DNA from: Octopus bimaculoides
Lineage: Eukaryota
Assembly: GCF_001194135.2 (NCBI RefSeq)
Contig: NC_069007.1
Span: 5,148,538-5,188,918, forward strand
Direction of reading: 5' to 3'
DNA: 40,381 nt
Part shown: piece by piece, positions 6,902 through 40,381 of the stretch
Layout of the letters: each line of letters opens with the position of its first letter
Position numbering within the stretch: position 1 is the first letter of the stretch
Made by a program: the position numbers and the translations under genes
The notes under the pieces: generated by a model
What the model was told of the DNA's origin: nothing
The model's database searches: none
What the model saw: only the letters and a program-made list of their open reading frames with translations

Positions 6902-7285
6902 CTCTTTTACTTGTTTCAGTCATTTGACTGCAGCCATGCTGGAGCACCACTTTTAGTCGAGCAAATTGCCCCCAGGACTTATTCTTTGTAAGCCTAGTAC
7001 TTATCCTATCCATCTCTTTGCTGAACTGCTAGGTTATGGGAACATAAACACACCAACATCAGTTGTCAAGCAGTGGTGGGGAGACAAACTCAGACATACA
7101 AATACACACACACATATATATGACAGGCTTCTCTCAGTTTCTATCTACCAAATCCACTTACAAGGCTTTGGTTGGCCTGAGGCTATAGTAGAGGACATTT
7201 TGCCCAAGGTGCCACACAGTGGGACTGAACCCGGAATCATGTGGTTGGGAAGCAAGCTTCTTACCACAAAGCCACACCTGCACCT
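6902..7285 (-). mobile_element. SINE family A, full length, head-to-head with the next copy
   Basis: Matches the family A consensus in reverse. Confidence 0.85.
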
Positions 7286-7320
7286 GTAGTTTCTTTGCAT
7301 GTTTTGAATTACAAATGTAC

Positions 7321-7489
7321 AGGCGCAGGAGTGGCTGTGTGGTAAGTAGCTTGCTTACTAACCACATGGTTCCGGGTTCATTCCCACTGCGTGGCACCTT
7401 GGGCAAGTGTCTTCTACTATAGCCTCGGGCCGACCAAAGCCTTGTGAGTGGATTTGGTAGACGGAAACTGAAAGAAGCCCGTCATATAC

Positions 7490-7533
<44 letters not shown>

Positions 7534-7752
7534 GTGTGTATATGTTTGTGTGTCTGTGATTGTCCCCCTCCCCACCCAAGCATCGCTTGACAACCGATGG
7601 TAGTGTGTTTATGTCCCCGTAACTTAGCGGTTCAGCAAAAGAGACCGATAAAATAAGTACTAGGCTTCCAAAGAATAAGTCCTGGGGTCGATTTCCTCGA
7701 CTAAAAGGCGATGCTCCAGAATGGTCGCAGTCAAATGACTGAAACAAGTAAA
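7321..7752 (+). mobile_element. SINE family A, full length
   Basis: Runs from AGGCGCAGGAGTGGCTGTGTGG to ACTGAAACAAGTAAAA. Confidence 0.9.
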
Positions 7753-7974
7753 AAAAAATAGAGTAAGAGAAAACATAAATGCCATCGATCTCACTGTTGT
7801 GGGGTAAGGCCTGCAAAGGCCATGGGCAGTGTCCCTTCTTTCAGACCATCATCTCGAGCTATATCATTGTTTAACATCTATTTCCTATACTAGCAGAAAA
7901 GTTTGTAAAGTTACCTTCTTGAGTTATACCAGTTCATAAGGGCCATTTTGTTGGTTTCCATGGCATATATAATT

Positions 7975-8155: not shown

Positions 8156-10643
8156 GCTATTTTCCATACTGGCATGGGTTGGACGGTATGGTTGGAATTG
8201 GTAAACCAGAAGACTACTGTGCCAAGCTTCAATGCATAGCTTGGCATGGTTTCAATGGTTGGGTGCCCTTCCCAATACTAAGGTGGTAAAAATTAAAAAC
8301 ACATTCCTGATGGAATCAATGAGAGTGAAGAATTGATTCAGTACTTGACTGCTATTTCATTTATTGACCCCAAGAGGATGAAAGGAATATGAATGTTACA
8401 TATTGATCATTGAAAAATAAACATTTGTTTTAGATATTTATCTGGAAATTTTATTACATAATGGAAATATGTACAAGAATACACACACACACACACAGAT
8501 ATTTATACTTCAATCTTAGACAAAAGACACCAACACATACACACACACACATATGTACAAATGGGCACACATACATGCACGCCCCCACACACATCTATAC
8601 ATACACAAATATAATCTATAGACATATATCTGTGCATATGGATAAACACACACATATATATACATACATATTCAGATATAAATTATATACACATGTATCT
8701 AAGCACATACATGCACACACACACACATTCAGGTATAAATTATATATGCATGTATATATATATATATATACACTACATAAACACACAAAAACATATACAT
8801 ATACACATACATACTTAAATAACAAAAACAGTGAAATTTCTACATGAAACGTTATTATTAATAGTAGTAGTATTAGTAACAGTAGTAGTAGTAGTAGTAG
8901 TTGTAGTATACATATAAGTATGCATTGACAGTTTTTATTGTTTCATTTATTTTTTTACACATAAACACATTTAAAAACACATCCCCTCCCCTTCATCAGT
9001 CATTTGATAAAAAGTCAATGAAAGTAATTTATTGATGAATGTGTCAACAATGAATAAGTTGATTAATGGAAAAGAGGAGTAGTATTAGTAGTGGTGGCTG
9101 TGGTAAAAGTAGTGGTAGTAGTAGTATTTGATTAATGAGAGTGAAGTGAAAGGTGTTTCTCTAAAAAAAATCAATTTTAGTTTTGTTGTTGAGCAAACAG
9201 AATTAAAGATTCTGATGAAGAAAAAAAAAAGATAAAAGGAAAAGAAATTTTTAATCAGTGAGAACAATATATAAGTATATGCACGTGTGTGTATGTATGT
9301 ATATGTGTGTGTGTGTGTGTATACATACCATGATTACTATATAACTTTCGATAAGGGCCATCAAACTTTTGTCCCTTGAGATACTTTGTTAACTTCTGTC
9401 ATTTAAAAATAAGTAAAAAATACATGTTTTATATATGCATATATATGAGTGTGTGTGTGTGTAAATATGCACTAATCTTGGTTATATATATTTACATGAG
9501 TGTGTACATATATATTTATGTGTGTGTGTGAGACATATATAACTTGTGAAATTTTTGTAGTCCAGAAACCCCCCCCCCCCCAGAAATGGCGAAAAGAAAA
9601 TCCCCAAAACTCAATCATGAACATCAATTAGCAAATTTAAATTACCCCAATAATTAATCTGCTTCATCCCAACAGATTCATCCCGACCCCTACAAAATAA
9701 GAATTAAAAAATAAAATAAAAGTAAAAATTATTTATTTCTCTTTGGATGACATTTACAATACATTTCTTAATGAAAAAAAGACCATCTTAGGTGAGTGAA
9801 TGAGTAGTCAACAGACGAGGTATGTGTTAAGGAGAAATAGCATACAGTTGTTGTTTAGTAACAAGATTAGCTCCCTTTATTACGCAAAACTTGTAACAAA
9901 AGGCAATCTAGCCATAAATATCCGGATTATGTTTTTTTTATTATTTATTTGTATCTTATATTTGATTATTTATATATTTTTGTAGATATCATGGACTAGC
10001 ATGATCTAGTGAGTTCCTTTCTTTCTGTAAGACAGTGGTGGTTTGTCATCTAAGGGAAATTTGGCTGCTGTTTTTAGCAGGCCATGTGACCACATAAGGC
10101 TTCTTCTTTGCTGAGTTCATGGGTGGATAATACAGATTAATTCTATAAAGGGAAAATAAAATAATACGAAAGTGCACCTGTTGCTGTGTAGCTTCCGTGG
10201 TCAACTCAAGCCCCCTTCAAACACACATGTAATGAAATATTTTCCATTCCGGCCATAGCTATCCCATCTAATTCTTATTCAGGGATTAACCTTATTGAAC
10301 ACTATTATATCAAATATGCTCTAAATTTTTCCTGTTTGTTGTTTGCTTGAGTCTAAAACTGCAGGGATTGGTTTTGATTTAAGGGGAAGATTTGGCTTGT
10401 TATTTCTAGCTGGTTGAGAGTTCACATAGAGGCCTGCTCTATAGTGGCTCCTCATGAAAAAAATGTTAACATGCTATGGGAGAGGAGCAGGGCAGAAAAA
10501 GGGACAGTCTTATGGAAGCAAAGACTTTTTTTTATATTATTTTTACCAGATTTGGCAGCTGGAAGATAGCATTTATTTGGTCTCTCTGCAATGAGGCTTT
10601 GAATTAACACAATTTTTTTTTTTTGGAACACACACACACACAC

Positions 10644-11432
10644 ACTCTTTTATTTATTTCAGTCATTTGACCGCAACCATGCTGGAGCACTGCCTTCAAG
10701 GATTCTAGTTGAACAAATCGAACCCAGGACTTATTTTTTAAGCCTAGTACTTAATCTGTAGGTCTGTTTTGCCAAACTGCTAAGTAACAGGGACATAAAC
10801 ACACCAACACAGGTTGTCAAGCAGTGATGGAGAGGGGAGGGTGACAAATACAGATACACACACATAAATATATACACACATATACATATATATGATGGGC
10901 TTCCTTCTGTCTCTTGCCACCAAATCCACTTACAAGGCATTGGTTGTCCTGAGGCTATTTTAGAAGAAACTGAACCCAGAACCATGTGATTGGGAAGCAA
11001 GCTTCTTCCCACACAGCCACACCTATATATATATACTCTTTTACTGGTTTCAGTCATTTGACTGCGGCCATGCTGGAGCACTGCCTTTTTTAGTCGAGCA
11101 AATCGACCCCAGAGCTTATTCTTTGTAAGCCTAGTACTTATTCTTTGGGTCTCTTTTGCCGAACCGCTAAGTTACGGGAACGTAAACACACCAGCATCGG
11201 TTGTCAAGCGATGCTGGGGAGACAAACAAACGCACAAACATATATATATATATATATATATACATATACGACGGGCTTCTTCCAGTTTCCATCTACCAAA
11301 TCCACTTGCAAGGCTTTGGTTGGCCTGAGGCTATAGTAGAAGACACTTGCCCAAGGTGTCACGCAGTGGGCCTGAACCCAGAACCATGTGATTGGTAAGC
11401 AAGCTACTTACCACACAGCCACTTCTGCGCCT
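10644..11432 (-). mobile_element. Two tandem family A SINEs (10644-11024, diverged; 11035-11432)
   Basis: Two consecutive reverse matches to the family A consensus. Confidence 0.8.
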
Positions 11433-11514
11433 ATTATATATATATATATGTGTATGTACGTATATATATATGCTTATGTATGCATATATATGTGTATGTA
11501 TGCATATGTGTATA

Positions 11515-13511: not shown

Positions 13512-14644
13512 TCGTTTTTAAACTGGCTTTTAAATTATTAAATATAAATTTTGTTTGTACTGTAACAATTTAATTTGATATCTGTCTGCTATAGTTTATC
13601 TAAACTCACTGGTGTGTTATTAAAAAAGAAAGTTAAATTCCATAGGTTTATGAAACCAATTTCTGTTCTTCAAAATTATATTTTGAAACGGTTTTAAAGG
13701 TTTAAATATGATTCCCTTTCTAATGTTCCAGTCTTTCTGCTGCAGGATTCTTTAAACCAACTGTTGTACCATTTCAAAAACAATACATATGTATATAATA
13801 ATTCTTTCAACAATAAGCACAAGGCTGACAATTTTGTGGGAGAAATAAGTTGATCACATCAACCTCAGTGCTCAACAAGTCCGTGTGTCATAGATCCCCG
13901 AAAGGATGACAGGCAAAATCAACCTTGACAGAATTTGAACCCAGACCATAAAGATGGATGAAATGCCACTAAGAATTTTTGTTCAGCATGCTAACAGCTC
14001 TGCCAGTTTGTTACCTTTTTTTTATTACAGGCACAAGGCCTGAAATTTTGGGGGAGGTAGGGCTAGTCAATTACATCGACCTCCCCAGTGCTCAACTGGT
14101 ATTTAATTTATCAACCCCAATAGGATGAAAAGGCAAAGTTGACCTTGGCAGAACTTGAACTCAGAATGTAAAAACGGCGTAATGTCACGAAATATTTTGT
14201 CTGGCATGCTAAAAATTCTGCCAGCTCGCTGCCTTAAATATGTATATATACATAAATAATAACTCTGTTGGTTAAGGAAACCAATTTGTATTCTTCAAAA
14301 TCATTCCCGTTTATGAAATGGTTTAAACTTTTAAATATAATGTACCAGTTCTATTTAACATGTCTATCTGCTATTAATTCAGATTTGTTTTTTTTAACGT
14401 TGTATTCAAGAAATATTTTCTGATCACTATCTAGCAGAATTTATATATTTGTCGAGATGGTGCATTATTATTATTTTTTTTTTGGCAAAAGATGTGATAT
14501 TAATAATTATAACAATGATAATAATAATAATAATAATCCAGGCTGAATGCTTTGGGTTTTTTTTTTTTTTTTTGTGTGTTTTGTCTTGTTCATTGTTTTG
14601 TTTTTTTGTTCTGATTAAGTTTTAGAAATTGTAGTTGATAACAA

Positions 14645-14806
14645 CTAAAGTGCTGTTCGTTCGTCGTATACAACTTCTGATTCGTTATGTATAAGACAAT
14701 CTGTGTCGTTAGAATAAAGCGCAGTGTGTGGTAAGGTACTGTTTTTCATGAGGGCAATCGCTGCTGCACTTTCGTTTCTCATGCGGTTCTTCTTCTTCGT
14801 GTCCAC
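14645..14806 (-). CDS. Terminal coding exon h (53 aa + TAG): VDTKKKNRMRNESAAAIALMKN...ESEVVYDERTAL*
   Basis: Long pyrimidine-tract acceptor ttttctcttttcttttttctaacttag|GTG in phase 0. The stop TAG lies at 14647-14645, followed by AT-rich 3'UTR-like DNA. The exon is below the 60-aa cut-off of the ORF track. Confidence 0.85.
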   Translation of the reverse strand: MDTKKKNRMRNESAAAIALMKNSTLPHTALYSNDTDCLIHNESEVVYDERTAL

Positions 14807-15490
14807 CTAAGTTAGAAAAAAAGAAAAGAGAAAAAAAATAGTCAGTTTGAGACACAAGCACTTACACACACACACACACACACATGGCAGAAGATAGTTT
14901 GAGGCACAAACACAAACACACACACACACACAGTAGACCTTTTGGTTACCAAGTTCCTTTTCAAGGCTTTGGTTGGCTTGGGGTTTATAGTAGAAGACAC
15001 ATGCCCAAGGTGCTGCACAGTGGGACTAAACCTGAAACTATGTGGTTGAGAAGTGGACCTAAGAACCCTGTGCCTCACAGATGATATGACAAAGGACTGG
15101 GTTCTCTGTCAATATGAAACCCTCAAAAAGACTTGCCCTCTTCAGCAAAATGCTATGTTTTAGGTTTTCCACTTGTTAGTGCTTCTCCCCCCACACTCAA
15201 GCATTATGCCTGTTCCTTTCTTCCAGCTCCTAGCTCTTTCAGACCATCTAATTACATTATAACTTACTTTTGCCCACGTCCACCTTGTGGCTATAATCTT
15301 TACTACACTTGCCGCTTGTCCCCACCCCACTTTTCGGCATCTTCCTATCTTCCGCTGCTCATAATTCTAGCTTCATTTTGGCAGTCCTCCTCCTTACCCC
15401 TCATTCTCTTTCCTACACAATCTTGTCAAACACCTACCTGTGCCTATTCAGCTTGTCATGTGAAGACCACTAGGCACCTTATTACCATTA

Positions 15491-15702
15491 TGAGGGAATA
15501 CTGAAAAGTCCTCGGCTTTGCATAAAATACAGGAAGATCAATTAATTAGAATTTTATTCAACATATTCCCCTCTTAGAAAAACTGAAGGACCACTGCAAT
15601 AACTGTGTGAATTTAAGCCCTGTAAAAGAACTCAGAAGGTTGGGTCTCCAACCAGGCCTTTCGCAAGACCCTTAAAGCCAGGAAGTTTTCAGTACCCACT
15701 TC
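15491..15702 (-). mobile_element. Mariner-derived MITE (family E) with an internal 39-bp inversion
   Basis: TA-flanked TIRs TGAGGGAATACTGAAAAGT...CTTT / AAAGCCAGGAAGTTTTCAGTACCC. The body is reversed relative to 23414-23633 except for 15576-15614. Confidence 0.75.
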
Positions 15703-16175
15703 TATTTATCTCTTGTAGTTCCCACTGATCATTTTCACTTTCTCTCTCTCATGTTTCCCTACGACATGGGAATAGCCATGCTGACCCCTCTACAGGAACC
15801 TCCTTTGTTCTTCTACCCCACAAAACGCCACCAAATCCTCCGTCAGGATTCGTAGTCCTGCAAACTGCATGGCAGCCTCAACAGGCAACATGGCATGAAA
15901 ATAAGCATTCAGTCCACATAGTAAAATGGTTGGTATCACTAGGTACTTTCCATGCCTAAGCAGACATTGGAACTTGGTGAAGTTCTTGGACATACTGGAT
16001 CTGGTCAAAACTGTCCAATCCATGCCAGCATGGAAGATAAGCATTAAATGGTGGTGATTTACAGCAGGAATTTTTAGAAAATACTTTGAACAATGTGAGA
16101 CTATGGCAAGATATGTTGCCACAATGTAGTGTCATCTCAATACCTTTATACAGCATAAAAAGAAATTCTACTTAC

Positions 16176-16282
16176 TCTAGAATATACTTCTTCTGCCGTC
16201 AGTCTTGGACTGTCTTCGGGTGAAGGGGGTCCAAAAGTAATTGATCCAGAAGAATCCTCTTCAAATCCAAGGTTTTGAATAC
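16176..16282 (-). CDS. Exon g (107 nt, phase 1 to 0): IQNLGFEEDSSGSITFGPPSPEDSPRLTAEEVYSR
   Basis: Acceptor tattattcattag|GT and donor TAGA|gtaagt (consensus). Only the phase-1 frame is open. Confidence 0.8.
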
Positions 16283-16715
16283 CTAATGAATAATAATAAT
16301 AATGATTTAGTTCATTAGTGTCTTGGTTATGAAAGCATGTATAGTGGAGGAGTTTGTTTCTCAACCACATGGTTCTGTCTAATGAATAAAAATTATAATG
16401 ATTTTAAATTTTGGTACAAGGTTAGCATTTTCTGGGGAGGGGTCAAATCAATTACATCATCTCCAACGTTTAACTGGTACTTATTTATTTTATTGATCTT
16501 GAAAGGATGAAAGGTTAAGTCAACCTTGACAGAATTTGAACTCAGAACATACAAAAAGACAAAATACTGCCAAGCATTTTGCTTGACATGCTAATGATTC
16601 TGTCAATTTGCCACTTTAAAGTAAAAATTTGTGGAATTTGAACTTAGAACACGAAGAGCTGATTGAATGTCATTAAGCATCTTGTATGGTTCTACCAGCT
16701 TGCTACCCTCTTTCG

Positions 16716-17135
16716 CTTGTTTCAGTCATTTGACTGCGGCCATGCTGGAGCACTGCCTTTAGTCGAGCATATCGATCCCAGGACTTATTCTTTGTAAGCC
16801 TAGTACTTATTCTATCGGTCTCTTTTTGCTGAACCGCTAAGTTACGGGGACATAAACACACCAGCATCGGTTGTCAAGCGCTGGTGGGGGGACAAACACA
16901 GACACAAACATATATATATATATATATTAATGGGTGTGTGCCTTTATTTGTCCCCATACCATCGCTTGATAACTGGTGTTAGTGTCTTTACATCACTGTA
17001 ACTTATCAGTTTGGTAAAAGAGACCGATAAAATAAGTACTAGGCTTACAAAGAATAAGTCTTAGAGTTGATTTCTTTAAAAAGAATCCTTTAAGGTGGTG
17101 TTCCAGCATGGCCGCAGTCAATTGACTGAAACAAG
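16716..17135. mobile_element. Fold-back of two family A SINE 3' halves joined across a (TA)n tract
   Basis: 16716-16900 is a reverse-strand 3' half close to consensus; 16945-17135 is a forward, more diverged 3' half. No 5' halves are present. Confidence 0.8.
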
Positions 17136-17495
17136 AAAAACGATAAAAGAAAGAATATACTGATCAGGTGATTAGAGTCATTAAGGTGAACCAGGTGTTG
17201 TACAGGAGAATACTTTGACGTACCAATATGCTTAACGCCAAAAGATGTCTTTAATTCTTTCGGCCAGAATGTTGGATGAACAAATCCTGGAGAAACATTC
17301 TTGTCTTGACTGGCATCAATTTTCTGAATTTCTCTTTCAGCAGAAGGACCATCGGAATTGGCATCCTAGGAATACGAAATCAGTAAGAGAATGTATAAAG
17401 ATACCAATACATTTGTATACATTTGAGTATATGCATATATATATATATAAGTGTGTGTGTGTGTGAGTGTGCGTGTGTGTGTGTATATGTGTGTG

Positions 17496-17537
<42 letters not shown>

Positions 17538-17871
17538 TATATATATATTATACTCATTTATTGTGCTTTTACTTATTAATTTTTCTATATGTGACAGTGG
17601 ATTTTCATCGATGGTTCTTTTCCCTAAAACTATATATATATATAAATTTTATAAGGAATATTCTAGAAGAATATGTTACTGAACTTATATTAAGTGCTCT
17701 ATTATTTTGAGCAAATNNNNNNNNNNNNNNNNNNNNNNNNNNNNNNNNNNNNNNNNNNNNNNNNNNNNNNNNNNNNNNNNNNNNNNNNNNNNNNNNNNNN
17801 NNNNNNNNNNNNNNNNTTTGGAGATTGAAACCTCTATCATCTTGCAATGCAATTGAACTAATTATAAATAC

Positions 17872-17891
17872 CTTTATCCAGAAGGTGGTCT
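17872..17891 (-). CDS. Micro-exon f (20 nt, phase 2 to 1): (R)DHLLDK(G)
   Basis: Acceptor cttgttcttgttgctgcag|A and donor AAAG|gtattt. It restores the frame between exons e and g and gives HLLDKGIQNLGFEE. Confidence 0.5.
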
Positions 17892-18109
17892 CTGCAGCAA
17901 CAAGAACAAGCTTAAAAATGGGATATTTATTCTCAATAATGATCTGATGCTGTGTTAGATTTAAATATCTCATTTTTTACTGAACCTAGAAGTGGGAGAC
18001 CCAGTAAACCAGTGGGTTAATGGCATGATGAGGCAGAACAACAGCTAAGATGTGAGATTCTGTCCATGGTTCAATAATGCGTAATATTATCCAACTCTCT
18101 CTTTCTTGG

Positions 18110-18960
18110 TCTACCCTAGGTCCACAACTTGTTGTTGGGGCAGAGTCCTCAAGTACCTCCGCCATAGGGTCCTACCAGAAGCAACTGTCATTAGACCTTG
18201 TAGATGGAGTCCCAAGCATGACCAACACAGGCTATGGATATTATCCAACCATTTCATTCTTGGCCTACCCCTTGGTCTCCTATCTGCAGAGGGGGTAGAA
18301 TCCTCAAGCACCTTCTCCACAGGGTCCTTCTTGTTTTTGGTCTACCCTTTGGTCTCCTGCCAGTTGGCTTGGCTTGAAGAATCCATCTTACGACCCTTTC
18401 TTGCAACATTTTAATTACATGTCCATACTACCACACAGGTGACTTCTCAATACGGAGCGGTAGATGCACAGCGTGTAGTGACTCCCTGATCACTGAGCTA
18501 CACACCCTGTGGAATAACTTACCTGCAGACACCCTTCGGAGGAAAACCATTTCGGCTGATTGTATTCTCGATCCTGCTCTTTCGGTCATTATTCAACATT
18601 CATAACAGAAGTTCCATGTTGTCTGCAAATATCAGCTAAACCATTCAATGAATGATCCTCATTTTCCGAAGAGCCACATAGCTCCATGTCAGATATCAGC
18701 ACCATGTTGTCTTCAAATATCAGCTAACCAACTCGATCATTGTGATACCATTTCCACAACTGCTGCACATGTTAATCCAGTTATGAAAACTATGAAGAAG
18801 AGAGGTAATGATATATATTCCTGCTGAGTCTAACACCCATGTTGAAAGCCTTTGACTTAGCACCATCTTTGCATTTGTATAGGGACTTCATGGCAACCAG
18901 AAGCTGCCCATTAATCCCAAAGTCCTGAAAACACTCCACAGCATGTCCTGGGGGTGTATG
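18110..18960 (-). pseudogene. Decayed RTE-clade LINE reverse transcriptase, C-terminal region
   Basis: Fragments include LIFADNMEL, RIQSAEMVFLRRV..HRVCSSVIRESL, LRIEKSPVW*YGHVIKM..GRRPKGRP and RRPRGRPRMKWLD. Stops and frameshifts are present. Confidence 0.85.
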
Positions 18961-19644
18961 TTTTTTGAAAGTTTACAAAGCAAAGTTGCATCATGCTGTC
19001 TGCAAATATCAGACAGCCGTGAACGTTACTGGAATATTTTGCACAGTCTTCCTTTTATTGTTTATCCTACACTTGTTTCAGTTATCAAACTGTGGCCATG
19101 CTGCAGCACCTCCTTGAAGGGTTAAGTCGTATAACTTGATCCCAGAGCTTTTAAAAAATTTTCTTTAAAACTTTACACACATCCTATTGAGAACTTTTTG
19201 CCGAAATGCTGCATTACAGAAAAGTAAACAAACCAACACTTGTTGTCAAGCAGTGGTGGGAAGACGCCCACACACATGGGGATCTGATCAAAGATTTTAC
19301 AATTAAACAAAATAGGAGTAAACTTTTCAAATATAAATGGATTGGAAGTATACAAGAATAAACATTATTTTCCATCTTCTTGTTTAGTTTTGTTTCATTT
19401 TGAAAAACAAATATATATTTTATGGTTTATTAATTATTGTTTATATTTTGAATTATATGTATAAGGGGGTACCAAAAATCTATTAAATGCTAAGGGCTTC
19501 ATCAGGTCTTAATGCGGCCCTGGTCTTGGATTTGACTTTAAACTTGCTAAAATAATATTCCATGTGGTTTATATGATCGGAAATGTAATATCGATGTATT
19601 CGTGGTGCCATTGTGAGGATCTGATCAAAGATTTTGCTATTTAA

Positions 19645-20274
19645 CCCATTACCTCCCATAATTCTATTAACTGGAATTTTTTTTTTTATGAAATTTTGAT
19701 TTCTAGCATAAAACAGCCTTAGAAACATGCTGGAATGATCAAAATAACATTTTAAATAGAAATAAGTGAGATATTGGGTGAAAAATTAGCAAACCTCATT
19801 TGAATATCAGAGAAATATACCTAGTAGATGTGGAGGCGCAATGGCCCAGTGATTAGGGCAGCGGACTCGCGGTTTCGATTCCCAGACCGGGTGTTGTGAG
19901 TGTTTATTGAGCGAAAACACCTAAAGCTCCACGAGGCTCCAGCAGGGGATGGTGGCGAACCCTGCTGTCCACCACAACTTTCTCTCACTCTTACTTCCTG
20001 TTTCTGTTGTGCCTGTAATTCAAAGGGTCAGCCTTGTCACACTCTGTGTCACACTGAATATCCCCCGAGAACTACGTTAAGGATACACGTGTCTGTGGTG
20101 TGCTCAGCCACTTGCACGTTAATTTCACGAGCAGGCTGTTCCGTTAAGCGACAGAGTGCCAACACATACCTAGTAGATATAGCAAAAAGGTTAGATATGT
20201 GTAAATATTGACAGATAATTACGAAATTTGTAATTTTTAAGTGATCTCATAGGAGATCACTGGTAGGTAATGGG
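19645..20274. mobile_element. piggyBac-type MITE carrying a nested SINE
   Basis: TTAA|CCCATTACCTCCCA ... TGGTAGGTAATGGG|TTAA (14-bp TIR, 1 mismatch). A paralogous empty site lies at 19280-19380. Confidence 0.8.
19830..20165 (+). mobile_element. SINE family B with 13-bp TSD
   Basis: TSD ATACCTAGTAGAT at 19817-19829 and 20166-20178. Small internal deletions relative to other B copies. Confidence 0.9.
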
Positions 20275-20437
20275 TTAAAAACGAGTAGGAGAAAATTTTT
20301 CAAATATGAATGAAATGGAAGTATACAAAAATACACATTATTTTCCATCTTACTGTGAGTTTTGTTCTAAGCACTTTGCTGAGAGTACTAACGATTTGCC
20401 CAGCTTGTAGCATTTGTTTTATTGTTTAATATGGCTT

Positions 20438-20650
20438 CATCATCATCGTTTAACGTCCGCTTTCCATGCTAGCATGGGTTGGACGATTTGACTGAGGATT
20501 GGTGAAACCGGATGGCTACACCATGCTCCAATCTGATTTGGCAGAGTTTCTACAGCTGGATGCCCTTCCTAATGCCAACCACTCTGAGAGTGTAGAGGGT
20601 GCTTTTACATGCCACCCGCACGAGGCCAGTCAGGTGGTACTGGCAATGGC
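20438..20650 (-). mobile_element. RTE-LINE-type 3' tail repeat (family D) ending in (GAT)n
   Basis: CATCATCATCGTTTAACGTCCG...GGATGCCCTTCCTAA. Related copies lie at 8160-8280, 23828-23904, 28471-28768 (+), 29634-29880, 30850-31130 (+) and 34670-34830. Confidence 0.7.
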
Positions 20651-20792
20651 TGACTGGCCTCGTGTGGGTGGCACGTACGGAGGGCACCAAGCTGTTGTAA
20701 GTGCTTAGGATCTTTATAGGTTTTAACCCGGCCACGACACTCTGGCAGTGTCCCCTATAAATGTCGGAGTGTTCAGCATATATATGTGTGTG

Positions 20793-21227
20793 TTATTTCT
20801 TTACTACCCACAAGGGATAAACATAGAGAGGACAAACAAGGACAGACAAACGGATTAAGTCGATTATACCGACTCCAGTGCATAACTGGTACTTATTTAA
20901 TCGACCCCGAAAGGATGAAAGGCAAAGTCAACCTCGGCGGAATTTGAACTCAGAACGTAGCGCCAGACGAATTACCGCTAAGCATTTCATCCGGCGTGCT
21001 AACGTTTCTTATTTCTTTATTGCTCACAAGGGTCTAAACATAGAGGGGACAAAGGGATCAATTCGATTACATCGACCTCAGTGCGTAACTGGTACTTAAT
21101 TTCTCGACCCCGAAAGAATGAAAGGCAAAGTCGACCTCGGTGGAATTTGAACTCAGAATGTAGCGCCAGACGAAATACCGCTAAGCATTTCGCCCGGTGT
21201 GCTAACGTTTCTGCCAGCTCGCTGCCT
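20793..21227 (-). mobile_element. Tandem head-to-tail pair of family C SINEs
   Basis: The two units (20793-21009, 21010-21227) share GAATTTGAACTCAGAA and GGATGAAAGGCAAAGTC. Further C copies lie near 3390, 5800, 13810-14235, 16405-16620 and 35208-35438. Confidence 0.8.
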
Positions 21228-21739
21228 AATGTGAGTGTGTGTGAAGGACGCATGGCCTAATGGTTAGAATGTTGCAGTCACGATGGCGAGATCGTGGTTT
21301 CAATTCCTAGACCGGTTGGTGTGTTGTTGTGTTCTTGAGCAAAAAAAAAAAACTTCAGCACCTGACGCGTGGCACTCCATGCTCCTGCTCAAGGAATGTC
21401 GATTTGATGGAGGCAGGTGAGCTAAGGNNNNNNNNNNNNNNNNNNNNNNNNNNNNNNNNNNNNNNNNNNNNNNNNNNNNNNNNNNNNNNNNNNNNNNNNN
21501 NNNNNNNNNNNNNNNNNNNNNNNNNNNNNNNNNNNNNNNNNNNNNNNNNNNNNNNNNNNNNNNNNNNNNNNNNNNNNNNNNNNNNNNNNNNNNNNNNNNN
21601 NNNNNNNNNNNNNNNNNNNNNNNNNNNNNNNNNNNNNNNNNNNNNNNNNNNNNNNNNNNNNNNNNNNNNNNNNNNNNNNNNATGCACGAAGGGATTTATC
21701 TGACAATGCAAAATAAATACATAGTGAATTGCAGCTTGA

Positions 21740-22000
21740 AGGTATGTCAGATATGTTGACATTGATGAAAGTATGTCGAATGTGAATGCATTGACAATGA
21801 CGTAGGCATGTCAAATGTTGATTAATTGACAATGAAGAAATATCAAATGCTGATACATTGACAACTACAAAGCTATGTTAAATGTATTGGTAATGATGAA
21901 GCAATGTCAAATACAAATGCCCTGACTCAGATGACGGTATGTCAAATGCAGATGCATCGACAATTATGACGGTATTTCAAATACACTGACAATGATAAGA
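21740..22000. repeat. Degenerate minisatellite, about 8 units of 27-36 bp (GGTATGTCAAATGC..ATTGACAATGA)
   Basis: Direct alignment of successive units. Confidence 0.65.
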
Positions 22001-22763
22001 AAGAAATACAAGCAACAAATACATACCTGTGTCTTTAAAATGGACACATCCTGTTTGCAACCGTAACTTGTGGCTTTCCTTACTTCAGGTGAAGTTAACT
22101 GAGTCTGCTGTAATCGGTTATTTCTAGAAGAGGAACATAAACAGGTAGATAGAGATATGAAAGTAGGTACAGGCATGTGAAAGACTGTGTGTGTGTGTAT
22201 GTGTGAGAGAGAGAGAGAGAGAGACAAAGACTGTTGTGTGGGGGCATGCAAGTGGCACATGTGCATGTAGTTGGTGTGTGTGTATCTATGCAACGTTTGA
22301 GGTGGTGTATGGTGTGCATAGTGTGGATGTGGTATCTACCTGTGAGTAGTGTTGTGGTGGCTGTGGAATGTGTTTGCGGTGTGAGTGCATATATATATAT
22401 ATGTGTGTGTGTGTGCGTTTGAATGTGAGAGTGTGGTGTATGTAGAAGCACGTGTGAGTGTGTGTATGAGAGTGTGAGACAGGTTGTGCACACGTGAGAG
22501 AGAGAGAGTGTGTGTGTGTGTGTGAGAGAAAAAGAGTTTGTGTGAGTGGTTGTGTAGGTGGACGTTTGGTATGAGTGTGTAATCTGAATGTTTGTGTAAG
22601 ACAATAATCTATCCACATTCATTTGAGTGAATGTATACATCAGATGCTTGTGTGTATGTATGAGGTTCTAATATAGTTGTGAGTGGAAGTGTACATGTGT
22701 CTGAGTGCATGTAGATGTGAGTGTGCATGTATATAAATATATATTTTTGTGCATGCACGTACA

Positions 22764-22799
<36 letters not shown>

Positions 22800-36000: not shown

Positions 36001-36053
<53 letters not shown>

Positions 36054-36097
36054 CGCNNNNNNNNNNCAAACACACACACACACACGCACACACACGC

Positions 36098-36130
<33 letters not shown>

Positions 36131-36237
36131 TACATACACACACACAAATTGTTTGTTTGCAGTACAAAGATTTCACTTTCTGAAAAGAACTGATTCTAAT
36201 CAGTTTATTGATTTCAACACATTATTATTACTATTAC

Positions 36238-36277
<40 letters not shown>

Positions 36278-36429
36278 TCCAAACTTGGTATTCCGCATCT
36301 CCTCCGTCGTCGTTGTCGTCGTTGTTGTTGTTGTTGTTGTCGTTATTATGGTTGTTGTTGTTATTTCCAAACTTGATATTTCTGCTTCTCTGATCAATTG
36401 ATTTCCAACAATTAGTATGAAGATAAAAC

Positions 36430-36497
36430 CTGGAAGAGTCTCGCCCCACCCTCTCCCATCGGCGCCAACACCATCACCATTATTATTCTTGTCGTTG
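36430..36497 (-). CDS. Exon b (68 nt, phase 2 to 1): NDKNNNGDGVGADGRGWGETLP
   Basis: First AG after a pyrimidine tract (cttcttctccttgttaacaacag|C), with a weak donor CCAG|gtttta. It supplies exactly the phase needed between exons a and c. Confidence 0.5.
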
Positions 36498-36895
36498 CTG
36501 TTGTTAACAAGGAGAAGAAGCAATTGAAATGCAAACAAATTAGTTACATCGAAACAGTTACATAAAAACAACCCTCCCCAATAAACATAAACATTATTGA
36601 TCTATTGCACTTATTATTATTATTATTATTATTCTATGTTAAAAATACATGTCTAATTGAGATACATAAACACCCCACCCATTTGAAATAAGAAGTTACC
36701 TCCTTAGACATACAATCAGATATGTAAATAGACCTGCTGGTTTGGCAGTGTGGTCCAGCAGTTTGTTTTACAACCATGTAGTTTTAGGTTTGGTTCCTGT
36801 GTGTGGCATCTTATACTTGGGAAAATATCTTCTACAAAGTGTCCGAGTTAAATTTCGCAAAGTTTTTTTTTTTTTTAATGTCTCCTCTTGTCAGG

Positions 36896-37275
36896 GTGGA
36901 GGACCAATGGCCCAGTGGTTAGGGCAGCGGACTCCTGGTCATAGGATTGCGGTTTCGATTCCCAGACCTGGCATTGTGAGTGTTTATTGAGCGAAAACAC
37001 CTAAAGCTCCACGAGGCTCCAGCAGGGGATGGTGGTGAACCCTGTTGTACTCTTTCACCACAACTTTCTCTCACTCTTACTTCCTGTTTCTGTTGTGCCT
37101 GTAATTCAAAAGGGTCAGCCTTGTCACACTCTGTGTCACCCTGAATATCCCCTGAGAACTGCGTTAAGGGTACACGTGTCTGTGGAGTGCTCAGCCACTT
37201 GCACGTTAATTTCACGAGCAGGCTGTTCTGTTGATTGGATCAACTGGAACCCTCGACGTCGTAAGCGACGGAGTG
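36896..37275 (+). mobile_element. SINE family B, full length, 12-bp TSD
   Basis: TSD CCTCTTGTCAGG at 36884-36895 and 37276-37287. Confidence 0.9.
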
Positions 37276-37450
37276 CCTCTTGTCAGGAACAGCTTGATGT
37301 AATGGTGAACAGTCAACGGTGTTGGAGAGCATGAAGATCAAAGTTGTAGTTGAGCCAAAGCTTGCATAATAAGTATTTCTTCTGGAGTAGGAGTGCTCTT
37401 AACATGAGGAAGATCAATAAACAATTCCTTTTAAAAAGAATTTTTGTTAC

Positions 37451-37487
37451 CTTCTGGAACCTAAGGTTGCAGGTTGATAGAATATTG
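37451..37487 (-). CDS. Exon a (37 nt, phase 1 to 2): xIFYQPATLGSR, FN3 C-strand-like
   Basis: Acceptor tattttttcag|CAATATTC and donor AGAAG|gtaaca. IFYQP fits the FN3 Y-x-I-x-Y strand. Confidence 0.6.
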
Positions 37488-37523
37488 CTGAAAAAATATT
37501 GATTTCTATATACACATACAAAA

Positions 37524-37557
<34 letters not shown>

Positions 37558-37914
37558 GAAAATGCATATATATACACAGAACCATATACAAATATATATA
37601 TACACATACTAATGCACATATATATATATATATACATCTGTGTGTATGTGTGCATGTGTCATGGTACCACTTGCTCCAGAGTTTATTAAATACATTTCCG
37701 CTGGGGGTTGATAAAATATCCTAAAAGTTAATTCAATCAACTACAATACTACACAGTTGCTTGCGCAGTCTGGCCTTGTACCAAGAGCCAAGCTAGAGAC
37801 CATAAGCAATAGAGCCAATGGCTAGTATTGTACACAATATTAGGTTAGTGAAAGCAGCAGAGACTGTAGAGAGGTAGAAATAGATTGAGATGCATGTTAT
37901 AATAGTTAGTATTA

Positions 37915-38296
37915 TTGTTGGCACTCTGTCGCTTACGACGTCGAGGGTTCCAGTTGATCCGATCAACGGAACAGCCTGCTCGTGAAATTAATGTGCAAGT
38001 GGCTGAGCACTCCACAGACACGTGTACCCTTAATGTAGTTCTCGGGGATATTCAGCGTGACACAGTGCGACAAGGCTGACCCTTTGAATTACAGGCACAA
38101 CAGAAACAAGAAGAAAGAGTGAGAGAAAGTTGTGGTGGAAGAGTACAGCAGGGTTCGCCACCATCCCCTGTCGGAGCCTTGTGGTGCTATAGGTGTTTTT
38201 GCTCAATAAACACTCACAACGCCCGGTCTGGGAATCGAAACCGCGATCCTACGGCTGCGAGTCCACTGCCCTAACCACTAGGCCATTGCGCCTCCA
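37915..38296 (-). mobile_element. SINE family B, full length
   Basis: Reverse match to the family B consensus, inverted relative to 36896-37275. Confidence 0.9.
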
Positions 38297-38297
38297 T

Positions 38298-38400
38298 GCA
38301 GTATTATGACTGGCTGTTGAAACAACTCTTTCTCATTGCTTAAACATGGATGTTATATATCTCAATTTTGCAAAGGCCTTTGATAAGGTTGATCATAGAA
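38298..38400 (+). pseudogene. Short non-LTR RT fragment (CR1/Jockey-like)
   Basis: NMDVIYLNFAKAFDKVDHR matches the RT motif D-V-I-Y-L-D-F-x-K-A-F-D-x-V. Confidence 0.7.
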
Positions 38401-39144
38401 TTGGCTGTCCATTTTCACTGTTGTTTGATGAGATTATAACAAAGACAGTAATTTAACCAGTTCTGCTGTGCCTGAGATGTTTCTAGGAACACCATGAAGG
38501 AAAGAAAAGTCAACGTTTGCAGCATCCACAGAGCTGCAAGGGTATGGCAGATATTGGTTAAGTATTACTATACATATCTGTCTTAAGGTCCCTAACTAAC
38601 GATTTTCTGTACCCTCTTAGCTATAAGAGACTATAATAAAAAAGGTTCCATATGGTGGGATTGAACTTAAACCTACATGGTTGGGAAGCAATCTTGTTAA
38701 CCACACAACCACACCTCTGCCATACGTTTACATTTATAACTCTACATATGTTTGTAATTATGGCAGTCCATATGTATGAATGTTTTCTAAAAGTCAGAGT
38801 CCACCATAGGGACGTGAAAGACCTTGGCTACTGATAAACTAGTTTCATATCAACATGAGAAGGCAAAGGTAAAAGCAAGAGATTGGGAAAAACAGGGTAA
38901 CCTTTTCCTCCACTGATAACATGATGAAATAGGAAGGATAATCTATCATAATTTAGTCATAGATAAGATTAATTGATATCACAGGATAATTACGGTCATC
39001 GTCACACAGGCAGTGGCTCTTGTTTCCAGTTTTCTGTGAAAACATGTCTGGCCATTGGCAAACATTTCATTTCCTGGAAATGGGTGAGGGTTAGAGATAG
39101 AAAAAATATCCATCACAGAAAATCTGCCTCAAGAAATTCCATTT

Positions 39145-39548
39145 GATCAATTAAGAGCTCTCTGAACTTTGCCCAGGCTATTCTTATTCTAGCAGCTACA
39201 CTTTCAGCGCACCCTCCCCCACTGCTGACTTGGTCATCTAGATAGCGGAAGCTATCAACTATGTCTAGTTTTTCTCCCTGGAATGTGACAGTTGTTTTCT
39301 GCACATTTACAGTGTTTATTGCTTCTGAACATCTGCCACATACAAAAACTAACTTCCTAGTTAACCTTCCTTTGATATTGCTGCATCTCTTATGTGTCCA
39401 TAGCTTGCACTGGGTGCATCTTATAGAGTTTCTACCTACACCTTTTCTACAGATTGAGCAGGGCCATCTACCTGAAGGGAGTTTGTGTTTTTTCTACCTT
39501 CCTACTTATTAGGACTTTGGTTTTAGCTAGGTTGACTCTAAGGCCCTT
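39145..39548 (-). pseudogene. RTE-clade LINE ORF fragment with a C4HC3 (PHD-like) finger after the RT
   Basis: KGLRVNLAKTKVLISR, then a frameshift near 39480, then SGRWPCSICRKGVGRNSIRCTQCKLWTHKRCSNIKGRLTRKLVFVCGRCSE...DSFRYLDDQVSSGGGCAESVAARIRIAWAKFRELL. Confidence 0.85.
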
Positions 39549-39953
39549 NNNNNNNNNNNNNNNNNNNNNNNNNNNNNNNNNNNNNNNNNNNNNNNNNNNN
39601 NNNNNNNNNNNNNNNNNNNNNNNNNNNNNNNNNNNNNNNNNNNNNNNNNNNNNNNNNNNNNNNNNNNNNNNNNNNNNNNNNNNNNNNNNNNNNNNNNNNN
39701 NNNNNNNNNNNNNNNNNNNNNNNNNNNNNNNNNNNNNNNNNNNNNNNNNNNNNNNNNNNNNNNNNNNNNNNNNNNNNNNNNNNNNNNNNNNNNNNNNNNN
39801 CATACACATTTTATTAGTTAGTCCACAAATAACAAATATTTATCCAATACAGTGTTAAGCACTCATTCTCAATGATCAATATTAATGCACACATAGATAT
39901 ATATATGTATGTATGTATAGACACACACACATACATATATATTATACATACAC

Positions 39954-40049
<96 letters not shown>

Positions 40050-40381
40050 ATAACATAACATTTGTGTAAAGTCCAATTAAGTTCATTTGATTATGTGTAC
40101 TGAATACATCATGTCTGTATATACACTGGATGTTGTTGACATACATTGAGTGTTTTAAGTTTATAAAATATTCTGCAGCATGGTAATTAACTTAGCTCAA
40201 CTATTCATAGTAATCACATAAAATCACACTACATGTGTAAAGTTCATGTGTGTATGTGTGTGTGTCAGCTGTTGCCACATTTTTATATCATATGCAGTAA
40301 TGAAGTCCATTTTATCATGAATGTATTTAGCAAGACTACATATTTTATACACATAAAACAGCATATATATATATATATATA

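What the first reader, a model, noticed from the sequence alone, without database searches (positions are those of the whole stretch)
14645..37487. Hidden micro-exon-rich receptor gene (FN3, mucin stalk, TM, Tyr/PDZ tail) largely invisible in the ORF track
Seen: eight exons with canonical splice sites whose phases chain into one stop-free 974-nt frame, four of them 20-68 nt long. Established: an FN3 E-F-G motif, a TM helix followed by Cys and a basic cluster, and a C-terminal T-x-L are hallmarks of adhesion or guidance receptors. Inference: a catalytically inert receptor of a family I cannot name, which automated annotation could easily fragment.
Basis: partly seen in the sequence, partly recalled or inferred. 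Interest (0 to 1): 0.75.

Follow-up and report, generated by a model that had tools for sequence, protein, structure and literature searches.

The report
Mis-annotated 3' end of octopus adhesion-receptor gene
The region holds the last seven exons of a real Octopus bimaculoides cell-surface receptor gene whose public model lacks its conserved tail.

Summary
The window is Octopus bimaculoides DNA. On the minus strand, 34519 to 14645 holds seven exons: 195, 330, 55, 97, 142, 107 and 162 nt, 1088 nt in all. Every exon has AG/GT borders, the phases chain, and the frame is stop-free.

They encode the C-terminal half of an FN3 domain, a Ser/Thr-rich stalk, one TM helix followed by Cys and a basic cluster, and a 199-aa tail ending ...VVYDERTAL.

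The structure rests on three kinds of evidence:
- Two transcript assemblies from related species are colinear with it.
- The Argonauta hians gene model and its genomic locus match it. Only these seven blocks, plus one 3'UTR block, are conserved in order.
- dN/dS of the tail is about 0.03.

All assembly gaps are intronic.

Its exon chain (eight exons, 974 nt, four of 20-68 nt, first exon at 37487) is not reproduced, and only one exon is under 68 nt.

UniProt model A0A0L8HC55 contains four of the seven exons and runs through a donor site into an intron.

The tail is an unnamed module without a Pfam family. It occurs in arthropods, other molluscs, an annelid, a nemertean and amphioxus. In non-cephalopod lophotrochozoans it ends proteins with 8 Ig and 5-6 FN3 domains.

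Any function, such as binding PDZ scaffold proteins, is inferred.

The parts
34325..34519 (-). Exon, 195 nt, phase 1 in and phase 1 out. It encodes an S/T-rich insert and the C-terminal half (strands E-G) of the membrane-proximal FN3 domain.
   Evidence: Borders are ...ttgtttttcag|AT and CAG|gtaagg. It is colinear with transcript L001 and with Argonauta L004 21101-21261. The L001 ortholog, which also has the N-terminal half, passes the Pfam fn3 cut-off (30.8 bits against 25).
30477..30806 (-). Exon, 330 nt, phase 1 in and phase 1 out. It encodes the Ser/Thr-rich stalk, the TM helix (about 30594-30523), Cys (30519-30517) and the basic cluster KNKKRRQK (30513-30490).
   Evidence: It matches L001, L003, L002 and Argonauta. 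The TM, Cys and basic pattern is conserved in Haliotis, Patella, chiton and Owenia orthologs.
23753..23807 (-). Exon, 55 nt, phase 1 in and phase 2 out: (M)MFYAYEDIGSLHPEDPA(R). It is the only exon under 68 nt.
   Evidence: Borders are tag|TGATG and CAAG|gtaaag. It is present in UniProt model P0001, L001, L003 and Argonauta.
22027..22123 (-). Exon, 97 nt, phase 2 in and phase 0 out: NNRLQQTQLTSPEVRKATSYGCKQDVSILKTQ. An internal cryptic donor (GAA|GTAAGG after 22084) would give a 40-nt version.
   Evidence: The transcripts and the Argonauta model use the full 97-nt form. P0001 reads through the donor at 22027 into the intron.
17224..17365 (-). Exon, 142 nt, phase 0 in and phase 1 out: DANSDGPSAEREIQKIDASQDKNVSPGFVHPTFWPKELKTSFGVKHI(G). 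It is absent from the UniProt model.
   Evidence: Borders are cctag|GATGCC and ATTG|gtacgt. It is colinear with L001, L003 and Argonauta.
16176..16282 (-). Exon, 107 nt, phase 1 in and phase 0 out: (G)IQNLGFEEDSSGSITFGPPSPEDSPRLTAEEVYSR. It carries an NPxF/Y-like site (NLGF in cephalopods) and a conserved Tyr motif. It is absent from the UniProt model.
   Evidence: Identity to L001 is 97% at the amino-acid level, and 85% at the nucleotide level to Argonauta. Both motifs are conserved across lophotrochozoan orthologs.
14645..14806 (-). Terminal exon, 159 nt plus the TAG stop (14647-14645): VDTKKKNRMRNESAAAIALMKNSTLPHTALYSNDTDCLIHNESEVVYDERTAL. It holds the conserved tail module and the class-I PDZ-type end T-A-L (14656-14648). 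It is absent from the UniProt model.
   Evidence: The acceptor is ...tttttttctaacttag|GTG. The profile search found 174 relatives at E<=0.001, with the module at their extreme C-terminus in the sequences inspected.
14511..14564 (-). Conserved block in the presumed 3'UTR, 81-134 nt past the stop.
   Evidence: It is 88.9% identical to Argonauta L004 32004-32057 and colinear after the last exon. Its function was not examined.

Best explanation
Window 34519-14645 (minus strand) is the 3' end of a protein-coding gene of Octopus bimaculoides.

Shown:
- Seven constitutive exons encode the last half of the membrane-proximal FN3 domain, an O-glycosylation-type Ser/Thr stalk, one TM helix, a juxtamembrane Cys plus basic cluster, and a 199-residue non-catalytic cytoplasmic tail.
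- The tail ends in a module conserved across bilaterians: (V/L)Y(S/A)(R/K/Q)V - KKNRMR - x - SAAAIA - DTDxLIxNExxVVY(D/N)ERTAL-COOH.

Inferred from orthologs in gastropods, a chiton, a bivalve, an annelid and a nemertean: the upstream, out-of-window part of the gene encodes a large IgSF ectodomain of about 8 Ig and 5-6 FN3 domains. The protein would then be a cell-adhesion or recognition receptor.

Inferred mechanism: the tail is mostly disordered and works through short linear motifs. These are:
- a possible palmitoylation Cys after the TM;
- an NPxF/Y-type site, degenerate in cephalopods (NLGF);
- a YxxV site (YSRV);
- one short amphipathic helix (NESAAAIALMK);
- a free C-terminal T-A-L that would dock class-I PDZ scaffold proteins, anchoring the receptor at junctions or synapses.

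The public model A0A0L8HC55 is a truncated mis-prediction of this gene.
For: Identity: UniProt A0A0L8HC55_OCTBM matches at 99%.

Structure:
- All seven exons have AG/GT borders with pyrimidine tracts and one stop-free 1088-nt frame.
- Two independent transcript assemblies, L001 and L003, are colinear with them.
- The Argonauta hians model GAB1605574.1 has the same exon chain.
- In the Argonauta genomic locus, only these seven blocks and one 3'UTR block are conserved in order. Everything else is dispersed repeats.

Selection: tail dN/dS is 0.03 for octopus against L001, and 0.03 for L001 against L003.

FN3: the ortholog reaches Pfam fn3 at 30.8 bits, or 41.1 bits with the loop insert removed.

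Family:
- The tail profile finds 174 proteins. Six of 1536-1798 aa were inspected; the five scanned with Pfam show Ig and fn3 domains, and all six carry the module at the extreme C-terminus.
- Arthropod and amphioxus members also exist.
- TM, Cys and basic cluster, G-x-N-P-x-F/Y, VYSQ and the terminal module align across Lophotrochozoa.
- The intron before V(D/N)xxKK falls at the same place and phase in insects, judging from read-through translations ...LYAK|V..Q|VNFSKK.

Tail structure: the AF2 model has low confidence (pLDDT 63) with one helix at NESAAAIALMK.
Against: - No O. bimaculoides RNA was available, so the exon junctions rest on cross-species transcripts and conservation.
- The N-terminal FN3 half and any Ig or FN3 exons were not found in the window or in 9.8 kb upstream of the Argonauta FN3 exon. 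A word-index search with that exon found nothing. The large ectodomain is therefore unproven for cephalopods.
- Arthropod family members have only a short ectodomain, so ectodomain architecture is not fixed in this family.
- PDZ binding, palmitoylation and Tyr-motif use are untested inferences from sequence patterns.
- The NPxF/Y site is NLGF in all three cephalopods.
Confidence: 0.8

Rival explanations
1. One reading: eight exons from 37487 to 14645, 974 nt, four of them micro-exons of 20-68 nt, forming a self-contained small receptor gene.
For: The end points at 14645, the FN3 exon, the TM exon and the 55-nt exon agree with the supported model. A 40-nt form of the fourth exon has a good cryptic donor and chains in frame.
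Against: The transcripts and the Argonauta model use a 97-nt exon plus 142- and 107-nt exons, for 1088 nt in total. The 37487-37451 exon has no homology support and is phase-incompatible. Half an FN3 domain cannot stand alone, and its N-terminal half lies 11 kb upstream in Argonauta. The region offers 3321 chance micro-exon candidates.
Confidence: 0.04
2. The short UniProt model (A0A0L8HC55, 222 aa, ending VCICCLYFFLIIVSVFEIPS) is a genuine isoform made by intron retention or early polyadenylation after 22027. The downstream exons would then be little used in octopus.
For: The 2015 model was built with that 3' end. Related species do make a short-tail isoform, by a different route: a 29-nt exon.
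Against: The read-through peptide is not conserved. The three downstream exons are intact, flanked by consensus splice sites, 85-97% identical at the protein level to other cephalopods and under strong purifying selection. The model also starts at an internal Met inside an FN3 strand.
Confidence: 0.1
3. In cephalopods the gene is a short FN3-stalk-TM protein with one FN3 domain, not an 8-Ig/6-FN3 giant. The ectodomain would have been reduced, as in arthropods.
For: No Ig or further FN3 exon was seen in 9.8 kb upstream of the Argonauta FN3 exon. The Argonauta model is annotated 'partial', with no more exons known. Arthropod members have short ectodomains.
Against: Introns here are 1-11 kb, so 9.8 kb is a small sample. 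The FN3 exon in Argonauta and in L001 opens with an acceptor site and not a signal peptide or start codon. All six non-cephalopod lophotrochozoan orthologs inspected are 1536-1798 aa.
Confidence: 0.2

Closest known systems
Unnamed 'ERTAL-tail' IgSF receptors of other lophotrochozoans. Examples: Haliotis rubra XP_046547800 ('protein sidekick-2-like'), Patella vulgata XP_050389224 ('DSCAML1'), Liolophura XP_064617043 ('DSCAM-like'), Pecten XP_033732840 ('hemicentin-1-like'), Owenia CAH1786577, Tubulanus XP_074654147 ('contactin-6-like'), and the partial Argonauta hians GAB1605574.1.
   Same: They share the last FN3 strands, a stalk, the LPVIVAG...TM, Cys plus basic cluster, G-x-N-(P)-x-F/Y, the (A/S)(D/E)(E/Q)VYS motif, and KKNRMRSESAAAIA...DTDSLIxNE..VVY(D/N)ERTAL at the C-terminus. 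Argonauta has the same seven-exon layout.
   Different: The 8 Ig and 5-6 FN3 domains of these proteins were not seen for octopus because they lie outside the window. Cephalopods have NLGF in place of NPxF/Y and a longer Ser/Thr stalk. The automated names disagree with one another, and none has been tested.
Arthropod 'uncharacterized protein' family, 300-520 aa. Examples: Diorhabda LOC130441003, Bacillus rossius LOC134537287, Argiope LOC129985161. Also Branchiostoma belcheri LOC109461951.
   Same: They have the same C-terminal module (KTRSLP...LYAKVNFSKKRKNRMRNDEAAIIALSKSRSQ..DTDSLVDNEAVIVYDERTAL). They are single-pass, with Cys and basic residues after the TM. The intron falls at the same place before V-N/D.
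   Different: The ectodomain is short and has no Ig or FN3 domain. They carry a KTRSLPAWVR box not seen in octopus. Identity to the octopus last exon is about 45-57%.
Classical neural IgSF adhesion molecules: DSCAM, Sidekick, contactins, L1/neurofascin, Robo.
   Same: These are the best solved-structure matches to the ectodomain of the mollusc orthologs: Robo2 at 1e-58, contactin-2 at 5e-55, DSCAM at 2e-46. Sidekick also uses a C-terminal PDZ ligand (from my own knowledge).
   Different: The tail has no detectable relative among solved structures (best E 0.88) or in Pfam. The domain count of 8 Ig plus 5-6 FN3 fits none of them, judging by the architectures as I recall them.
Podocalyxin/CD34-type sialomucins.
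   Same: The layout works alike: mucin stalk, one TM, and a short non-catalytic tail ending in a class-I PDZ ligand (DTHL/DTEL, from my own knowledge).
   Different: There is no sequence relation. Those proteins lack an FN3 domain and the KKNRMR...ERTAL module.

Membership tests
ERTAL-tail receptor family (unnamed; no Pfam entry) | Extreme C-terminal module KKNRMR-x-x-(S)AAAIA ... DTDxL(I/V)xN(E/D)xx(V/I)(V/I)Y(D/N)ERTAL-COOH | tested here: met
   The octopus last exon was one of the 16 sequences used to build the tail profile, which found 174 proteins at E<=0.001. It aligns column for column with these relatives.
ERTAL-tail receptor family (unnamed; no Pfam entry) | Single TM helix followed directly by Cys and a basic cluster | tested here: met
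   VIVAGSLTAGLVLIFLLGV (mean KD 2.55), then IYHC-LKNKKRRQK. The same pattern occurs in molluscs, the annelid and beetles.
ERTAL-tail receptor family (unnamed; no Pfam entry) | Conserved Tyr motif just before the module (LYAKV / VYSQV), with a phase-0 intron between it and V(N/D)xxKK | tested here: met
   Octopus has ...EEVYSR|VDTKKK, with the intron at 16176/14806. Insect genomic read-through translations show LYAK|V...Q|VNFSKK. The intron position in insects is inferred from those translations, not from aligned DNA.
Lophotrochozoan 8-Ig / 5-6-FN3 subfamily of the above | N-terminal array of about 8 Ig domains followed by 5-6 FN3 domains | not testable with these tools
   The window holds only the last half of one FN3 domain. 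Nothing further was found in the window, in L004 upstream sequence or by word search. No O. bimaculoides flanking sequence could be fetched.
Pfam fn3 (PF00041) | Score at or above the gathering cut-off (25 bits) over a full seven-strand domain | tested here: inconclusive
   The octopus model, which has strands E-G only, gives no fn3 hit. The orthologous L001 sequence with the N-terminal half scores 30.8 bits, or 41.1 bits without the loop insert.
Sidekick | 6 Ig and 13 FN3 domains, with a C-terminal GFSSFV PDZ ligand (from my own knowledge) | tested here: not met
   The C-terminus is ERTAL. Pfam reports at most 8 Ig and 5 fn3 matched stretches in the mollusc orthologs. The name 'sidekick-2-like' is an automated label.
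DSCAM | 9 Ig, 4 FN3, Ig10 and 2 FN3 domains, plus a DSCAM cytoplasmic domain (from my own knowledge) | tested here: not met
   The tail matches no Pfam family and no PDB sequence, DSCAM included. The orthologs' ectodomains match Robo and contactin better than DSCAM. Domain order was not mapped in detail.
   Exon sizes are 195, 330, 55, 97, 142, 107 and 162 nt. A 29-nt exon exists only in the L001 and L003 transcripts. It is absent from Argonauta and from the readable octopus intron.

The most novel reading that the evidence does not exclude
The KKNRMR...ERTAL tail is an undescribed cytoplasmic module that predates the protostome-deuterostome split.

It has been joined to very different ectodomains: 8 Ig plus 6 FN3 domains in Lophotrochozoa, and almost nothing in arthropods. 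It acts as a PDZ- and adaptor-docking platform.

In some cephalopods a 29-nt frame-shifting exon toggles between the 186-aa tail and a 10-aa tail (...PEIFSTRL). That short tail still ends in T-x-L, so splicing removes the signalling motifs but keeps the scaffold anchor.
Probability: 0.4. Interest if true: 0.55.

Novelty: new member of a known kind. Interest (0 to 1): 0.33.

Why it matters
For octopus genomics, this corrects one gene model. It adds three 3' exons (136 codons) carrying the only deeply conserved part of the protein, and it shows that the public model ends inside an intron.

More broadly, it flags a conserved cytoplasmic module with no name and no Pfam entry. I found no paper mentioning its motif strings, although it is present from arthropods and molluscs to amphioxus. 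Cephalopod neural adhesion receptors are of interest, so a PDZ-anchored IgSF receptor with switchable tails would be a reasonable candidate for synaptic or junctional studies.

None of this is surprising in kind. Draft-genome models are often truncated, and IgSF receptors with PDZ ligands are common.

Tried and rejected
No combination of the supported exons with 37-, 40- and 55-nt pieces gave 974 nt with consistent phases, so I abandoned it.
- Looking for the N-terminal FN3 half in 34520-40381. Six-frame reading and tblastn with L001, Argonauta and mollusc orthologs gave only a chance-level hit at 35720-35676, inside a poly-T tract.
- Looking for the 29-nt exon of L001 and L003 in the window, in L002 and in the Argonauta intron. 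Nothing was found with up to 6 errors, and no plausible AG-N29-GT candidate exists.
- Pfam and PDB searches with the tail found nothing significant.
- Literature search for the motif strings found nothing relevant. The first attempt, 'DERTAL', only matched 'Neandertal'. Run and assembly accessions did not identify the species of L001 or L003.
- A word-index search with the FN3 N-terminal half returned no candidates. That index also missed the Argonauta protein, so the absence of an octopus RefSeq protein in its results is not evidence that none exists.
- Fetching the O. bimaculoides contig through P0001 failed, as the protein is not on record.
- Rfam on the whole window gave no match.
- AF2 of the last-exon peptide gave a low-confidence model (pLDDT 63), so I did not run a fold search.

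Full report
**What the window is.** The window is eukaryotic: AT-rich, full of microsatellites and dispersed repeats, with nine assembly gaps. A peptide joined from the three obvious minus-strand open segments matched UniProt A0A0L8HC55 of Octopus bimaculoides at 99%. The window is therefore O. bimaculoides genomic DNA, and the gene lies on the minus strand.

**Checking the observation.**
- The peptide ESAAAIAL...VVYDERTAL is at 14773-14648, with a stop at 14647-14645.
- The segment with NLSAVISSLSPHSVYNVSIAASTGTSGLGTPTILSINT lies at 34519-34325.
- The Ser/Thr-rich segment, the TM helix and the Cys plus KNKKRRQK cluster lie at 30806-30477.

Its first exon can be read off as 37487-37451 (cag|CAATATT...AGAAG|gtaaca, 37 nt).

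**Independent evidence for the exon structure.**
- The first protein search returned a 201-aa product of a Logan transcript contig (L001, run SRR27666069), which I fetched. A second contig is L003 (SRR8281691).
- Both contigs are spliced transcripts of a related animal, presumably a cephalopod. Their species could not be identified.
- They run from the FN3 domain through the stalk and TM into a long tail ending ...VVYDERTAL.
- tblastn and blastn place them colinearly on seven window segments.
- Reading the splice sites by eye gives exons 34519-34325 (195 nt), 30806-30477 (330), 23807-23753 (55), 22123-22027 (97), 17365-17224 (142), 16282-16176 (107) and 14806-14645 (162 with the stop).
- Every exon has a pyrimidine-rich AG acceptor and a GT donor, five of the six GTAAG or GTATG and one GTACG. 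The phases chain 1-1-2-0-1-0, and the 1088-nt frame has no stop.
- The exhaustive profile search later returned a partial annotated protein of Argonauta hians, GAB1605574.1. It has exactly the same chain.
- I fetched its genomic locus, L004. A blastn of that locus against the window finds, in colinear order, only these seven blocks and one block just after the stop (14511-14564). All other matches are multi-copy repeats.
- The tail coding sequence has dN/dS of 0.03 between octopus and L001, and 0.03 between L001 and L003.

I regard the seven-exon structure as established short of octopus RNA evidence.

**Gaps.** All six gaps inside the finding lie in introns.
- The closest are 127 nt past the donor of the FN3 exon and 138 nt past the donor of the TM exon. 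No frame crosses a gap.
- The Argonauta model and the two transcripts join the same exons directly, so no constitutive exon is hidden in a gap between 34519 and 14645.

- Only the 55-nt exon lies in the 20-68 nt range.
- The 97-nt exon contains an internal GAA|GTAAGG site. Used as a donor, it gives a 40-nt piece that chains in frame with the last exon.
- The exon at 37487-37451 has no counterpart in L001, L003, Argonauta or any conserved block.
- Of the three frames of that exon, one has a stop, and the other two leave phase 0 or 2. The FN3 exon needs phase 1.
- In Argonauta the exon carrying the N-terminal FN3 half (APGPVLNATYEEFGTCVHLHWSPP...) lies 11 kb upstream of the FN3 C-terminal-half exon. 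The window offers only 5.9 kb upstream, and nothing like it is there.
- The region contains 3321 AG...GT intervals of 20-68 nt with an open frame. Canonical sites and chaining phases are therefore not evidence by themselves.

**The public model.** A0A0L8HC55 (222 aa) starts at a Met inside the FN3 exon. It uses the TM, 55-nt and 97-nt exons, then reads through the donor at 22027 into the intron (VCICCLYFFLIIVSVFEIPS*). It lacks the last three exons, 136 codons. I could not consult newer RefSeq annotation. The word-index search tool also missed the Argonauta protein, so its silence is not informative.

**What the protein is.**
- The octopus FN3 fragment alone does not reach the Pfam threshold. 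The orthologous L001 sequence with its N-terminal half scores 30.8 bits against a cut-off of 25, or 41.1 bits with the long loop insert removed.
- The tail has no Pfam family and no relative among solved structures.
- A profile of the last exon with arthropod hits found 103 proteins in the word-indexed search. A second profile, of the last exon with 15 of those hits, found 174 in the exhaustive one.
- Arthropod members (insects, spiders, mites, crustaceans, a millipede) are 300-520-aa single-pass proteins with a short ectodomain. Nearly all are labelled 'uncharacterized'.
- Amphioxus has one member.
- In Haliotis, Patella, a chiton, Pecten, the annelid Owenia and the nemertean Tubulanus, the module ends proteins of 1536-1798 aa. 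Pfam, run on five of the six, reports up to eight Ig stretches and five fn3 stretches in each.
- Their automated names disagree: sidekick-2-like, contactin-5-like, DSCAM-like, DSCAML1, hemicentin-1-like, contactin-6-like.
- Their ectodomains match Robo, contactin, titin and DSCAM structures generically.
- An alignment from the last FN3 strands to the C-terminus shows conserved features. These are L-x-P-x-x-x-Y-x-V...G-x-G (FN3 F/G strands), LPVIVAG...TM, Cys plus basic cluster, G-x-N-P-x-F/Y (NLGF in cephalopods), (A/S)(D/E)(E/Q)VYS, KKNRMRSESAAAIA and DTDSLIxNE..VVY(D/N)ERTAL.
- No paper in the searchable library contains these motif strings.

**How it most likely works (inference).**
- The tail has no enzymatic domain. 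AF2 gives a low-confidence model with one short helix over NESAAAIALMK, which fits a disordered tail acting through linear motifs.
- In the sequences inspected the module ends the protein, and its last residues are nearly invariant: T-A-L in most, with T-S-L, T-N-L, T-Q-L, T-M-L or T-V-L in a few. This fits the class-I PDZ ligand pattern (S/T-x-hydrophobic-COOH), which is established knowledge of PDZ domains.
- I therefore propose a cell-surface recognition or adhesion receptor held at junctions or synapses by PDZ scaffolds.
- The YSRV and NPxF/Y-type sites would serve sorting or adaptor binding, and the juxtamembrane Cys is a possible palmitoylation site. None of this was tested.

**A side observation.**
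- Both transcript assemblies carry a 29-nt insert between the TM exon and the 55-nt exon. It shifts the frame, so the protein ends ...(I/T)(A/P)PEIFSTRL, again T-x-L, right after the membrane.
- The long-tail frame downstream is nevertheless under strong purifying selection between those two species. An isoform that skips the insert must therefore exist.
- The insert is absent from the gap-free 1.35-kb Argonauta intron and from the readable octopus intron. It may be lineage-specific.

**Verdict.** The exon chain is wrong in detail, and 'micro-exon-rich' does not apply. The region is only the 3' end of a longer gene. It is a new member of a known kind, an IgSF-type single-pass receptor, carrying a conserved but undescribed tail module. 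Interest is modest.

Noticed in passing
L001 787-815 and L003 about 473-501 (not in the window): A 29-nt frame-shifting insert sits between the TM exon and the 55-nt exon in two independent transcript assemblies. It gives a short isoform ending ...PEIFSTRL*, which also ends T-x-L. The long-tail frame downstream still shows dN/dS of 0.03. The insert is absent from Argonauta and from the readable octopus intron.
   Followed up: partly
window 22027-21967 (-): UniProt A0A0L8HC55 reads through the GT donor at 22026 and ends in intron sequence (VCICCLYFFLIIVSVFEIPS*). It also starts at an internal Met in the FN3 exon.
   Followed up: yes
window, e.g. 819-1197, 6902-7753, 10642-11455, 16708-17145, 24904-25323, 27258-28320, 35277-35599: About a third of the window matches itself elsewhere. 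SINE-like elements occur in 10-15 copies, and several also hit many places in the Argonauta locus. No Rfam family matches them.
   Followed up: partly
window 39116-39493 (-): A 126-codon open frame has a PHD-finger hit (PF00628, 26.7 bits) and abuts the gap at 39549-39800. It may be part of a mobile element or of another gene.
   Followed up: partly
window 18000-18600 (-): Open frames with ...GRRPKGRPKTRRTLW... and ...RPRGRPRMKWLDNI... resemble the C-terminal end of non-LTR retrotransposon ORF2 proteins (from memory). Pfam gave no hit.
   Followed up: partly
window 14511-14564 (-): A 54-nt block 81-134 nt past the stop codon is 89% identical to Argonauta. It is probably a conserved 3'UTR element.
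   Followed up: no
window 36200-36400 (-): Long (AAT)n and (ACA/ACG)n microsatellites read as poly-Asn and poly-Thr. They give spurious low-complexity matches to the Ser/Thr/Asn-rich parts of the Argonauta protein.
   Followed up: yes
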